Of a stretch of DNA of 64,000 nucleotides, positions 61,401-63,764 are shown in pieces. This DNA is from Octopus bimaculoides. Its lineage: Eukaryota. The notes under the pieces were generated by a model. The model was given only the letters and a program-made list of their open reading frames with translations. It made no database searches and had not been told where the DNA came from. A program made the translations under genes and the position numbers. The stretch is taken from NCBI RefSeq assembly GCF_001194135.2, contig NC_069004.1, positions 32,629,749 to 32,693,748 of the forward strand. Reading direction: 5' to 3'. The stretch's first letter is position 1. The number at the start of each line of letters is the position of its first letter.

Positions 61401-61982
61401 TCTGTTTTTGTAAAACCTTAAAAAAAAAAGAAAGTAGAGAAAAAGTAATTGAAGAAATTAGGATTCAATAATTTCTACAACATGAATTTGTATGTGGTCA
61501 TGTTCGTGTTTCTCTTTTTATTTTTGTTGTATTGTTGATGTTAGTGTTCTTGTTATTCATGTTTTTTTAACACTTCATGTAGAAAGCTGATTCTGATTTC
61601 TGAGATATATACATTTCTCCTGCATTCATCATATAACACCTCTTGCCTCGGCATCATCATCATCATCATCTTACTAATTAATTAATCTTTTATACATTAT
61701 CCCTCTTTTTTTTTTCTAATAAGTTAATACATCAATTACTGTGGCATATGGAAGTGGAGTTTTAAGAGATAAACACACACACACACACACACACACACAC
61801 ACACACACACACACACACTCACACTCTCTCACACATACACACATGCACACACACACACATTTATTTTAAACTCCTTTATCATTTGTTGTCATTCGGTTTT
61901 TACTGAAGAGTAGAGAGCAGACTTGTTCTGTGAAACCTTAACCCAAACCCATCTCTAAGCCGAAAACGACAACTATCCAACC

Positions 61983-62051
61983 ATGGGAGAATATTTTGCT
62001 CTCTTCTTCTTTGTCTTCTTCTTTCTTCTTTTAATTGCTCCTTCGAGTTAA
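61983..62051 (+). CDS. Small ORF copy 1, MGEYFALFFFVFFFLLLIAPSS* (putative membrane micropeptide)
   Basis: ccaaccATGG context. First 20 residues identical to copies 2 and 3; TAG changed to TCG extends it by 2 residues. Confidence 0.35.
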   Translation: MGEYFALFFFVFFFLLLIAPSS

Positions 62052-62489
62052 TTCTGTCCACCCATCTATTCATCCTCTGTTGTTGTTTAACCCCAGGTAA
62101 GCCTCCCCAAAAAAGTATTACCAATATTCATTAGGTAAACTTATTAAATAGAAAACTGACTGGATTTTAAAATCGAACTGAGCATTGAACCCTCTCACCT
62201 GATTATAAAGTAGAATACTTAAACAGGTAACAGAAATTGATTGGGGAAAAAAAAATCAATATGTACATACATACAGGTACATTGATGTTGCAATATAAAA
62301 TTAGGTCAGTTAATTAAAACTAGTAACTAATTGAAAACAAAAAAATATTGTCAGAAGAATACCTGCATATAATTATTGAGACTAACACACACACACACAC
62401 ACACACACCTGTCATCATTTGTTTTCCTAAAGATTTTAATGAGGAATATACAACTCCATTTCTATGTTGTAAACAACAACTATCCAACC

Positions 62490-62552
62490 ATGGGAGAATA
62501 TTTTGCTCTCTTCTTCTTTGTTTTCTTTTTTCTTCTATTAATTGCTCCTTAG
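62490..62552 (+). CDS. Small ORF copy 2, MGEYFALFFFVFFFLLLIAP*
   Basis: Homology to the other copies is confined to roughly the ORF plus ~15 nt each side. Three substitutions versus copy 1 within codons 1-20, all synonymous. Confidence 0.38.
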   Translation: MGEYFALFFFVFFFLLLIAP

Positions 62553-63381
62553 AGTTAATTCTAGCCCCTAGCTCAGCCCAAGATAACTATTGCCAATGTG
62601 CCCCAGATACATGTCCGTTTCATAGAAAACTGACGGGGATATTAATTGCACTTGACAGACTGGTCATTGGCTACCAAAACTGAGTGGACAACTCACTGTT
62701 AAGCTCTGTCAACAGACTAAAAACTTCTTTCCACTCTTATTCCTAAGCATGTAGGTGTCTCAATTGACAAGACAAACAAAAAGCAAGCAGCAGAAACCGA
62801 TAAGAAAATCAACATACACACATCTCTCTCTCTCTCTCTCTCTCTCTCTCTCTCTCTATATATATATATATATATATATATATATATATATATACACACA
62901 CATATATATATATATATATATATACAATTCATAGTTGTCACCTTGTAAACGTGGTTGTCCTGTACAGATCAATGGGAGCAACCACATTGAGGTGGTAACT
63001 ACTATTACTTTTCTATAGAGTTACTACTTGAAATATATATATATATATATACATATACATGCACACACAACTGTCACCATCTCTATCTATCTGTCTATCT
63101 ATCCATGCATACATACACACACATACATGTGCATGTATCAGTGTATACATGTATACTGGAATTACTACAGTATAAAATTAGGTTAGTTAACAGGAATTGC
63201 TAATTGACTGAATTGAAAAAAAAAAAATTGTCAGAAACATACATAAAATGCATATTTATTCAGATTAACACACACACACACCTATTTTTAACTCCTTCAT
63301 TTAGTGAGGACTAGAGAGCAGATCTATTCTGTGAAACCATAACAACCCTGTCTCTAAGCCTAAAACGACAACTATCCAACC

Positions 63382-63444
63382 ATGGGAGAATATTTTGCTC
63401 TCTTCTTCTTTGTCTTCTTCTTTCTCCTTTTAATTGCCCCTTAG
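63382..63444 (+). CDS. Small ORF copy 3, MGEYFALFFFVFFFLLLIAP*
   Basis: Same peptide; two synonymous substitutions (CTC, GCC) versus copy 1. Confidence 0.38.
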   Translation: MGEYFALFFFVFFFLLLIAP

Positions 63445-63764
63445 AGCTAATCCTGTCCACCCATCTATTCATCCTCTGTTGTTCTTCATGTTTAATCCCA
63501 GGTCAACCTTCATTTAGCTGACCAACGTACAAGGGCACCTGTTTACACCATATCTTTTCTCTATATGCATAGTGTATCTTGGATTACATTCTGCAACATG
63601 CCTTTCCTTACTTTCTTAAGTGAAATAGTACAGGATTTGAGGGAGATTTGGTTGCTCTTTCTAGCAGACCTAACAACAATGTAGAGGACTCTAAGTGCTT
63701 CTTAGTTGTTTACTGTATAACTTTTTTTAATTTATTTTACATATACATACATACATACATACAT

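What the first reader, a model, noticed from the sequence alone, without database searches (positions are those of the whole stretch)
61960..63480. Triplicated small ORF encoding an invariant 20-aa hydrophobic micropeptide; all sense-codon changes are synonymous
Seen: three copies (61983, 62490, 63382) start in a ccaaccATGG context and encode MGEYFALFFFVFFFLLLIAP. The five differences within codons 1-20 (GTC/GTT, TTC/TTT, CTT/CTC, CTT/CTA, GCT/GCC) are all silent third-position changes. The only other change is TAG to TCG in copy 1, adding Ser-Ser. Upstream flanks carry many substitutions and indels, and copy 2 homology nearly stops at the ORF edges. If a quarter to a third of random changes are silent, 5/5 has a rough chance of 0.001-0.004, but the frame was chosen post hoc. 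Inference: a tandem family of single-pass membrane micropeptides, comparable in size and hydrophobicity to regulin-type SERCA regulators, though no homology is claimed. Alternatives: (a) the pyrimidine run is a polypyrimidine tract for a ccttag| acceptor (copy 2 then opens 43 codons, LILAPSSAQDNYCQCAPDTCPF...); (b) the minus frame RINSKEQLKEERRRQRRREQNILPWLDSC is open in all three copies but has non-synonymous changes; (c) neutral duplication with gene conversion.
Basis: partly seen in the sequence, partly recalled or inferred. Interest (0 to 1): 0.8.

Follow-up and report, generated by a model that had tools for sequence, protein, structure and literature searches.

The report
Triplicated 20-codon ORF in tandem repeat
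Three nearby copies of a tiny, very hydrophobic 20-codon reading frame in an octopus genome differ only by silent changes, which hints at a real micropeptide, but they lie in an old three-copy tandem duplication of repeat-rich DNA and the evidence (five substitutions) is too thin to tell a gene from a coincidence.

Summary
ATGs at 61983, 62490 and 63382 (+) open ORFs that all encode MGEYFALFFFVFFFLLLIAP. All five variable sites in the 60 nt are third-codon positions. Copy 1 reads TCG where the others read TAG.

The ORFs are not free-standing. They sit in the best-kept part of a head-to-tail triplication of a ~0.35-0.45 kb unit with an internal (CA)n run. Copies 1 and 3 are the closest pair and flank the older copy 2.

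For coding:
- 0/40 changes at codon positions 1-2 against 5/20 at position 3 (Fisher 0.003; 0.004-0.012 by enumeration).
- The periodicity is confined to the ORF.
- All copies share an ACCATGG context.

Against:
- Copy 2's low-divergence patch (92 nt) overruns the ORF by 29 nt.
- The non-coding 3' block of copies 1 and 3 is 38/39 identical.
- The ORF is built on a 12-nt TTC-type tandem repeat.
- The peptide lacks regulin/sarcolamban features.
- No protein, RNA-family or DNA match was found anywhere searched.

My weighting: neutral duplication plus one short gene-conversion patch plus coincidence ~0.45; translated smORF ~0.25; non-coding functional element ~0.18; transposable-element module ~0.10. 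Octopod genomes and RNA/ribosome data would settle it, and none is reachable with these tools.

The parts
61722..62170 (+). Repeat unit 1 (type A): leader, (AC)n 61773-61859, core with ORF copy 1, 3' block, and a further block shared with unit 2
   Evidence: Collinear homology to unit 3 (61899-62104 vs 63300-63509, 87%; 61847-61876 vs 63268-63297, 90%). Collinear homology to unit 2 (61846-61912, 61949-62055 and 62148-62170).. The 5' limit is approximate.
62285..62645 (+). Repeat unit 2 (type B, older): TATAAAA 62294-62300, (AC)n 62385-62408, core with ORF copy 2, rearranged 3' part
   Evidence: 62291-62562 vs 63168-63454 at 72%. Far-upstream mismatch to unit 3 is 19/92. Homology to units 1 and 3 breaks at 62562 and resumes at 62622-62645.
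63155..63509 (+). Repeat unit 3 (type A'): TATAAAA 63171-63177, (AC)n about 63268-63281, core with ORF copy 3, 3' block ending at CCCAGGT
   Evidence: Beyond 63509 the similarity to unit 1 falls to the random level.
61983..62051 (+). ORF copy 1: 22 codons, MGEYFALFFFVFFFLLLIAPSS, TAA stop (TAG changed to TCG at codon 21)
62490..62552 (+). ORF copy 2: 20 codons plus TAG. An in-frame ATG at 62439 would give a 37-aa form, MRNIQLHFYVVNNNYPT+peptide
63382..63444 (+). ORF copy 3: 20 codons plus TAG
62471..62562 (+). 92-nt low-divergence patch of copy 2 (A1 columns 265-356; equivalent to 61964-62055 and 63363-63454). It holds the 19-nt leader, the ORF, the stop and a 10-nt trailer
   Evidence: 4 copy-2-specific changes in 92 nt, against 6 in the adjacent 20 nt (Fisher 0.002) and 19/92 further upstream (Fisher 0.001).. 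The block invariant in all three copies is A1 columns 270-315, which is 61969-62014.
62002..62024 (+). 12-nt tandem repeat TCTTCTTCTTTG x1.9 that forms codons 7-14 (the same repeat lies at 63401-63423; in copy 2 it is degraded by two C>T changes)
   Evidence: Tandem Repeats Finder, 100% matches.
62056..62104 (+). 3' block shared by copies 1 and 3 only (63455-63509 in copy 3). It is non-coding under the micropeptide reading and ends in donor-like CAG|GTAAGC (62094-62102). Copy 3 has CAG|GTCAAC (63499-63507)
   Evidence: 38/39 identical plus one 6-nt indel in A1 columns 361-405. Sequence read. The splice-site reading is inference only.
61900..62124 (-). Antisense ORF of 74 aa (53 aa at 63311-63472 in copy 3), K/E/R-rich, the complement of the pyrimidine tract
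   Evidence: It has no homologue and only a sub-threshold SLX9 hit (18.8 bits against a cutoff of 27). The variable sites fall on its codon position 2, so they change the amino acid there. This ORF is rejected as coding.

Best explanation
This is an old head-to-tail triplication of a ~0.35-0.45 kb non-genic unit, in the order A (copy 1), B (copy 2), A' (copy 3). It lies in microsatellite-rich octopus DNA that also carries a minisatellite immediately upstream.

The 20-codon ORF is an incidental reading of a TTC/TTT-type pyrimidine tract, itself a 12-nt tandem repeat, that happens to follow an ATG.

Copies 1 and 3 are simply the youngest pair, about 9% apart over the whole unit. The older copy 2 owes its near-identity in the core to one short gene-conversion patch of about 92 nt copied from an A-type unit.

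On this reading, the five later substitutions in the ORF all hitting third-codon positions is a small-sample coincidence.

Shown: the tandem architecture, the patch boundaries, the repeat nature of the tract, and the lack of any homologue.
Inferred: the conversion event and the absence of translation.
For: - Collinear homologous blocks define three head-to-tail units, with copies 1 and 3 the closest pair.
- Between copies 1 and 3 the mismatch fraction is 17/197 overall. The ORF (2/60) is no better conserved than the non-coding 3' block (1/39).
- Copy 2's low-divergence stretch is a sharply bounded 92-nt patch that overruns the ORF by 19 nt on the 5' side and 10 nt on the 3' side. Those 29 nt carry only one copy-2-specific change (P = 0.0009-0.05, depending on the neutral rate assumed).
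- Codons 7-14 are a perfect 12-nt tandem repeat.
- Short hydrophobic ATG-ORFs are common here: 14 of the 425 ORFs of 15-30 codons have a mean Kyte-Doolittle hydropathy of at least 2. Kozak-like contexts occur in 12% of them.
- No protein in a 5.8-billion-cluster database contains the peptide or any overlapping frame. That database does hold Octopus bimaculoides and O. vulgaris proteomes.
- There is no Pfam domain, no Rfam family or tRNA and no stable RNA fold.
- There is no consistent promoter, poly(A) or splice signal across the three copies (read).
Against: - The coincidence it needs is improbable. P = 0.0043 for five silent changes out of five, given their types. P = 0.012 for any common phase. 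Fisher gives 0.0028 for position 3 against positions 1+2.
- The period-3 pattern stops at the ORF borders.
- Third-position divergence (10%, 15%, 25%) is about as high as flank divergence (15%, ~30%, 21-29%). That fits long-term selection on the peptide better than recent homogenisation.
- Gene conversion between units whose flanks were already about 20% diverged is expected to be rare (established knowledge, not tested here).
- None of the 16 other 20-codon windows with 2-5 differences in repeats of this window has an identical translation. That control is too small to calibrate anything.
Confidence: 0.45

Rival explanations
1. A translated small ORF under purifying selection. Each unit, or one transcript covering several units, yields a 20-22 aa hydrophobic peptide. 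It would act either as a stand-alone membrane micropeptide or as a conserved-peptide upstream ORF in a leader exon that ends at the CAG|GT site. The conserved 19-nt leader would be initiation context.
For: - 0/40 changes at codon positions 1-2 against 5/20 at position 3 (Fisher 0.0028).
- All five changes are silent (P = 0.0043).
- The periodicity is confined to the ORF.
- Synonymous-site divergence is comparable to flank divergence.
- ATG, frame and length are intact in all three copies, although the flanks carry many indels.
- ACCATGG is invariant.
- The only stop-codon change leaves a stop two codons later.
- TATAAAATTAGGT is conserved about 200 nt upstream of copies 2 and 3.
Against: - The case rests on only five substitutions, the frame was chosen after the fact, and the case was picked out by scanning.
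- Conservation is not ORF-delimited (the 3' block).
- The peptide is a translated TTC repeat: 40% Phe, a 16-residue hydrophobic run that is short for a bilayer, and no flanking basic residues.
- Copy 2 has an in-frame upstream ATG, copy 1 lacks the TATA-like motif, and there is no shared poly(A) signal.
- Nothing matches in octopus proteomes, anywhere else in the protein database or in the literature.
Confidence: 0.25
2. A functional non-coding element conserved at the nucleotide level. It could be a cis-regulatory or protein-binding site, or part of a non-coding or leader exon. One variant would naturally give a 3-bp periodicity: a binding site for a long C2H2 zinc-finger array, since each finger reads about 3 bp and octopus has a greatly expanded C2H2 family (from memory of the octopus genome paper, not tested here).
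For: - The invariant block (61969-62014) straddles the ATG, with 14 nt upstream and 32 nt inside the ORF.
- The patch overruns the ORF on both sides.
- The non-coding 3' block of copies 1 and 3 is 38/39 identical and ends at a consensus-like donor, CAG|GTAAGC.
- Four of the five ORF changes are pyrimidine-to-pyrimidine, so the pyrimidine tract is kept.
Against: - A generic nucleotide-level constraint does not predict that changes fall only at every third base (P about 0.004-0.04).
- The splice-acceptor version fails: the AG is lost in copy 1 and copy 2 has no donor.
- There is no stable structure on either strand (z from -0.24 to +0.85) and no Rfam family.
- No binding or expression data are available.
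Confidence: 0.18
3. A module of a dispersed transposable element. For example, it could be the conserved central domain of a SINE-like family, present in different sub-family contexts and clustered here by chance or by local duplication of an inserted element.
For: - SINE superfamilies share 40-80 bp central domains that stay conserved while heads and tails differ (PMC4824008). This resembles a conserved ~92-nt core in more diverged flanks.
- The window is packed with octopus SINE-like repeats.
- Each unit carries a simple-repeat run.
Against: - There are only three copies in 64 kb. All are co-oriented and collinear, and their flanking homology fits tandem duplication.
- There is no tRNA-like, 5S-like or 7SL-like head and no Rfam hit.
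- The (CA)n run is internal rather than terminal.
- The core was not found in the metagenome, viral or prokaryote collections, though these are nearly uninformative for octopus.
Confidence: 0.1

Closest known systems
Ordinary local tandem (segmental) duplication with ectopic gene conversion between paralogous units
   Same: - Head-to-tail collinear units.
- Microsatellites inside and between the units.
- A sharply bounded high-identity patch inside otherwise diverged paralogues.
- Another minisatellite lies next door.
   Different: The substitutions inside the patch show a strict codon-phase pattern, which conversion does not predict.
Polycistronic or tandem smORF genes of insects: tarsal-less/polished rice (several 11-aa ORFs on one mRNA) and sarcolamban (two ORFs of 28-29 aa). 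The tal/pri and Drosophila sarcolamban details are from established knowledge. The Pri paper PMC10635573 was seen only as a title and abstract.
   Same: Several copies of one very short ORF, encoding the same peptide, lie in the same orientation within about 1.5 kb. Conservation is at the peptide level with silent DNA changes.
   Different: - The peptide has no sequence relation to these families.
- The spacers hold long microsatellites and many intervening ATGs.
- No transcript is known.
- The peptide is a low-complexity Phe/Leu run and does not carry the LDPTGxY motif of tal/pri.
Regulin/sarcolamban family of SERCA-regulating micropeptides (phospholamban 52 aa and sarcolipin 31 aa, both lengths from established knowledge; sarcolambans 33-45 aa in bioRxiv 10.1101/2020.07.19.211243)
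   Same: A small, hydrophobic peptide encoded by an unannotated smORF.
   Different: - At 20 aa it is shorter than any family member.
- The hydrophobic run is 16 residues.
- There is no Lys/Arg/Gln at the membrane border and no Trp-Leu-Leu motif.
- There is no homology.
Conserved central domains of SINE superfamilies (CORE, V, Deu, Ceph, Meta; PMC4824008)
   Same: A 40-90 bp core is kept nearly constant while the surrounding element sequence diverges. The function of such cores is unknown.
   Different: There is no pol III head. The copies are tandem rather than dispersed within the window. The core sequence could not be compared with Repbase or SINEBase here.

Membership tests
Regulin/sarcolamban SERCA regulators | Single transmembrane helix of about 20 or more residues in a peptide of about 28-65 aa | tested here: not met
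   The peptide is 20 aa (22 in copy 1). The uncharged run F5-P20 is 16 residues. The lengths of known members come and from established knowledge.
Regulin/sarcolamban SERCA regulators | Conserved residues: Lys/Arg/Gln at the N-terminal end of the helix, and the Trp-Leu-Leu motif in its C-terminal half | tested here: not met
   MGEYFALFFFVFFFLLLIAP contains no K, R, Q or W. The motif description is from bioRxiv 10.1101/2020.07.19.211243.
Regulin/sarcolamban SERCA regulators | Detectable sequence homology or a Pfam family match | tested here: not met
   No hit at E <= 10 in 5.8 billion protein clusters. No Pfam family on the ORF-containing pseudo-protein.
Regulin/sarcolamban SERCA regulators | Binds and modulates SERCA; expressed in muscle | not testable with these tools
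   No expression or biochemical data are available.
Functional smORF / micropeptide gene (general) | Purifying selection on the peptide (dN/dS far below 1) across copies | tested here: inconclusive
There are 0 non-synonymous and 5 synonymous changes. Only three paralogues are available and no orthologues.
Functional smORF / micropeptide gene (general) | Conservation delimited by the ORF | tested here: not met
   Copy 2's patch overruns the ORF by 29 nt with only one change. The 3' block of copies 1 and 3 is 38/39 identical.
Functional smORF / micropeptide gene (general) | Sense-strand transcript, ribosome occupancy, detectable peptide | not testable with these tools
   No octopus RNA-seq, Ribo-seq or mass-spectrometry data can be reached.
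tal/pri-type polycistronic smORF gene | Several tandem ORFs encoding the same short peptide | tested here: met
   Three co-oriented ORFs with an identical 20-aa product lie within 1.46 kb.
tal/pri-type polycistronic smORF gene | LDPTGxY peptide motif, with all ORFs on one mature mRNA | tested here: not met
   The motif is absent from the peptide (the motif itself is from established knowledge). Whether the ORFs share one transcript could not be tested.
Local tandem duplication | Head-to-tail, collinear homologous units that include the flanks of the ORF | tested here: met
   The offsets are 507 and 892 bp, with collinear blocks both upstream and downstream of the core.
SINE / dispersed transposable element | Pol III-type head (derived from tRNA, 5S or 7SL) | tested here: not met
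   ARAGORN found no tRNA genes. Rfam found nothing over the copies.
SINE / dispersed transposable element | Many dispersed genomic copies with target-site duplications | not testable with these tools
   There are only 3 copies in the 64 kb window, all local. No octopus genome is searchable. Scans of the metagenome, viral and prokaryote collections were empty.
Cassette exon (pyrimidine tract plus AG acceptor, with a GT donor downstream) | Acceptor and donor present in all copies, with an open and conserved frame between them | tested here: not met
   The AG is lost in copy 1 (TCG). The donor is strong only in copy 1 (CAG|GTAAGC), weak in copy 3 (GTCAAC) and absent in copy 2. Both open frames between the sites show amino-acid changes.
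miRNA or other structured RNA | Stable conserved hairpin, or an Rfam match | tested here: not met
   Folding z-scores run from -0.24 to +0.85 on both strands of all three copies. Rfam matches lie only on the neighbouring microsatellites.

The most novel reading that the evidence does not exclude
The three ORFs are translated. On this reading, octopus carries a tandem family of 20-22 aa Phe/Leu-rich membrane micropeptides (or conserved-peptide leader ORFs) held by purifying selection since duplications that are 10-30% diverged at neutral sites. This would be a smORF family with no relative in any database searched. It would be shorter than any known regulin and arranged like the insect tal/pri and sarcolamban loci.
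Probability: 0.25. Interest if true: 0.7.

Novelty: new member of a known kind. Interest (0 to 1): 0.4.

Why it matters
If the peptide is real, it would be one of the shortest conserved membrane micropeptides in any animal. It would also be the first smORF family described in a cephalopod: my two literature searches on the topic (octopus with micropeptide; cephalopod with smORF) found no relevant paper. That would make it a handle on how very short hydrophobic peptides arise from simple-sequence DNA and then come under selection.

If it is not real, the case is a useful calibration. A perfect-looking 'all changes synonymous' signal at the 0.3-1% level can arise in a period-3 pyrimidine repeat inside a gene-conversion patch. 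Paralogue-only dN/dS on 20 codons should therefore not be trusted without orthologues or expression data.

Tried and rejected
- **Antisense ORF (74 and 53 aa).** There is no exact record and no protein shares its 5-mers. The only family match is a sub-threshold SLX9 hit. The variable sites fall on its second codon positions, so I rejected it as coding.
- **The +1 frame (111 aa in copy 2, 66 codons in copy 1).** There is no record and no homologue. The same sites change the amino acid in this frame, so I rejected it.
- **Peptide plus all overlapping plus-strand frames, concatenated as one query.** 164 word-sharing candidates were retrieved and none scored E <= 10.
- **DNA pattern scans.** I scanned the invariant 23-mer and the 31-mer from the 3' block against the metagenome, viral and GTDB collections and found nothing. 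These collections hold essentially no cephalopod DNA, so genome-wide copy number remains unknown.
- **Structured RNA or miRNA cluster.** The region does not fold better than shuffled sequence and has no Rfam match.
- **tRNA-derived SINE head.** None was found.
- **Pfam scan.** I scanned the locus ORFs and the eight least repetitive neighbouring ORFs and found no domain.
- **Empirical false-positive rate from other repeats in the window.** Only 16 comparable 20-codon windows exist and none has an identical translation, which is too few to calibrate.
- **Literature.** The peptide string is not in the library, and there are no cephalopod smORF or micropeptide papers.
- **Not run.** I did not run the exhaustive protein-representative search or structure prediction. 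The peptide is below the 30-aa limit, and a 20-aa low-complexity match could not reach significance.
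Full report
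**1. The observation**

A degenerate back-translation of the peptide's first ten codons (MGEYFALFFF) matches exactly three sites in the window: 61983, 62490 and 63382, all on the plus strand. None of 100 dinucleotide-preserving shuffles gave a match. All three ORFs translate to MGEYFALFFFVFFFLLLIAP. Copies 2 and 3 end at TAG. Copy 1 reads TCG there and ends two codons later at TAA.

In a three-way alignment, the five variable columns within the 60 coding bases are all third-codon positions and all are silent. The context ccaaccATGG is invariant. BLAST of each copy against the whole window finds no fourth copy.

**2. Where the window comes from**

The window is a short-read draft scaffold with N gaps. 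It has about 36% G+C and is dense in microsatellites and SINE-like repeats. Translated repeat fragments from elsewhere in the window hit predicted proteins of Octopus bimaculoides at 73-80% identity, and one of O. vulgaris at 54%. The window is therefore octopus DNA. This also shows that the protein database holds octopus proteomes.

**3. What the copies sit in**

The ORFs are not isolated. Copies 1 and 3 share 212 bp at 87% (61899-62104 vs 63300-63509), plus a 30-bp block next to the (CA)n run. Copies 2 and 3 share about 290 bp at 72% (62291-62562 vs 63168-63454). Copies 1 and 2 share three collinear blocks: 61846-61912, 61949-62055 and 62148-62170.

So there are three head-to-tail units of about 0.35-0.45 kb. 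Each has an internal (CA)n run, and microsatellite-rich spacers separate them. By their flanks, copies 1 and 3 are the closest pair (mismatch fraction about 0.15 upstream) and copy 2 is older (0.21-0.37). The order along the DNA is therefore A-B-A'. A degenerate minisatellite lies just upstream at 60860-61400, so this stretch is prone to local duplication.

The high-identity patch starts 19 nt before the ATG and ends 10 nt after the stop. Weaker homology continues for about 200 nt upstream.

**4. The case for coding**

Enumerating all single-base changes of the ORF gives 37 silent changes out of 180. Given the observed mutation types (two C>T, two T>C, one T>A), the chance that all five are silent is 0.0043. 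The chance that five random sites share any one phase is 0.012. Position 3 (5/20) against positions 1+2 (0/40) gives Fisher P = 0.0028.

The period-3 pattern is confined to the ORF. Variable sites before the ATG and after the stop fall in all phases.

Third-position differences between pairs are 2, 3 and 5 of 20. These are of the same order as the flank divergences of the same pairs. That is what long-term purifying selection on a peptide predicts, and it is not what a recent homogenisation predicts. The start context ACCATGG is good and is kept in all copies, but 12% of short ORFs in the window have A/G at -3 and G at +4 by chance.

**5. The case against, or for something else**

(a) The conserved stretch is not ORF-shaped.
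- The block invariant in all three copies (61969-62014) straddles the ATG.
- Copy 2's low-divergence patch is 92 nt long, with 4 copy-2-specific changes. The adjacent 20 nt carry 6 (Fisher 0.002).
- 29 nt of that patch lie outside the ORF and carry only one change (P = 0.0009-0.05, depending on the neutral rate assumed).
- Between copies 1 and 3, the non-coding 3' block is 38/39 identical plus one 6-nt indel. That is as well conserved as the ORF (58/60).
- For the copy 1-copy 3 pair alone, I see no significant heterogeneity along the unit.

(b) Codons 7-14 are a perfect 12-nt tandem repeat, TCTTCTTCTTTG x1.9. The peptide is in effect a translated TTC/TTT repeat. It is 40% Phe, its hydrophobic run is 16 residues, and it has no basic residues.

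(c) The signals around the ORF are inconsistent between copies.
- The TATAAAATTAGGT motif about 200 nt upstream is present in copies 2 and 3 and absent in copy 1.
- Copy 2 has an in-frame ATG 17 codons upstream (62439).
- No poly(A) signal is shared.
- The donor-like CAG|GT is strong only in copy 1.

(d) Nothing related exists in any resource I could search.
- There is no exact record of the overlapping ORFs.
- No protein shares words with the antisense ORF.
- A concatenated query of the peptide and all sense frames found nothing at E <= 10.
- There is no Pfam domain, no Rfam family or tRNA and no stable fold.
- The DNA scans were empty, and the peptide string does not appear in the paper library.

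**6. Weighing the readings**

Each simple reading has to absorb one anomaly at about the 0.1-1% level.
- 'Neutral duplication plus one conversion patch onto copy 2' explains the architecture, the patch that overruns the ORF, and the ORF's repeat nature. It has to treat the phase pattern as luck.
- 'Selection on the peptide' explains the phase pattern. It needs either extra constraint on the flanks or a conversion event as well.

The likelihood ratio from the phase pattern, ORF integrity and start context favours coding by roughly 10^3. The prior that a given local three-copy repeat in a 2.7-Gb repeat-rich genome is a micropeptide family is perhaps 10^-5 to 10^-3. The case was also picked out by scanning. 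My posterior estimates are:
- neutral duplication plus conversion plus coincidence: 0.45
- translated smORF: 0.25
- non-coding functional element: 0.18. This includes a speculative long C2H2 zinc-finger-array site, which would naturally give a 3-bp periodicity.
- transposable-element module: 0.10. SINE superfamilies do keep 40-80 bp central domains constant (PMC4824008). Here, however, there is no pol III head and the copies are tandem.

**7. Comparison with known families**

In layout the locus resembles the insect tandem-smORF genes (tal/pri, sarcolamban), with several copies of one very short ORF within about 1.5 kb. It shares no sequence or motif with them.

The regulin/sarcolamban comparison fails every testable criterion. 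Sarcolambans are 33-45 aa (28-29 aa in Drosophila, from established knowledge). They have a Lys at the helix start and a conserved Trp-Leu-Leu motif (bioRxiv 10.1101/2020.07.19.211243). This peptide is 20 aa and has no K, R, Q or W. The resemblance is limited to being small and hydrophobic, and 14 of the 425 short ORFs in this window meet that description by chance.

**8. Verdict**

The locus is a legitimate low-cost candidate to check against octopus genomes and transcriptomes, and it is not yet a finding. What would settle it is set out under the decisive next steps: copy number and orthologues in other octopods, dN/dS over many more substitutions, stranded RNA-seq or Iso-Seq, and Ribo-seq or mass spectrometry.

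Noticed in passing
window 60860-61400: A degenerate minisatellite with a unit of about 125-140 bp (60936-61201 vs 61073-61324, 71.5% identity) lies immediately upstream of the triplication. The stretch appears prone to local tandem duplication.
   Followed up: partly
window 63738-63866: A near-perfect palindrome, seen as a self-inverted match of 81.8% over 132 nt and centred near 63802 (…cgtttaacgtccgctttccatgctagcatggaaagcggacgtcgttaaa…). It is embedded in (ATAC)n/(AT)n arrays that run to the end of the window. It looks like two head-to-head 5' ends of the abundant octopus SINE-like repeat, whose translation ([11 protein letters not shown]…) recurs at about 5250, 54040, 57250 and 63800.
   Followed up: partly
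window 5263-5664 and 54324-54689 (repeat-derived ORFs): These repeat fragments match annotated Octopus bimaculoides proteins A0A0L8GDB2 (C2H2 zinc finger) and A0A0L8I061 (WD40) at 73-80% identity, and an O. vulgaris hypothetical protein at 54%. Published octopus gene models therefore appear to include repeat-derived segments.
   Followed up: no
window 62855-62925, 63029-63157, 63736-63999: Sub-threshold Rfam matches to mir-297, mir-3149, mir-466, mir-1277 and others (E down to 1e-8 but far below the gathering scores) all lie on TA/CA/ATAC microsatellites. They are composition artefacts and not miRNA genes.
   Followed up: yes
window 24000-28000: G+C rises to 0.44 here, against about 0.35 elsewhere. 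Long ORFs in this stretch are homopolymer-rich (runs of T, S, P, V and D codons). This may be a CpG-rich or promoter-like island, or simply simple-sequence DNA.
   Followed up: no
window ~12.8-13.1 kb, 22.5-23.0 kb, 36.3-37.0 kb, 46.1 kb, 50.8-51.0 kb, 57.5-58.4 kb: Runs of N (assembly gaps) show that the window is a short-read draft scaffold. The triplicated region 61700-63600 contains no gap, and its copies differ by at least 5-9% even in the core, so it is not an assembly or haplotype artefact.
   Followed up: partly
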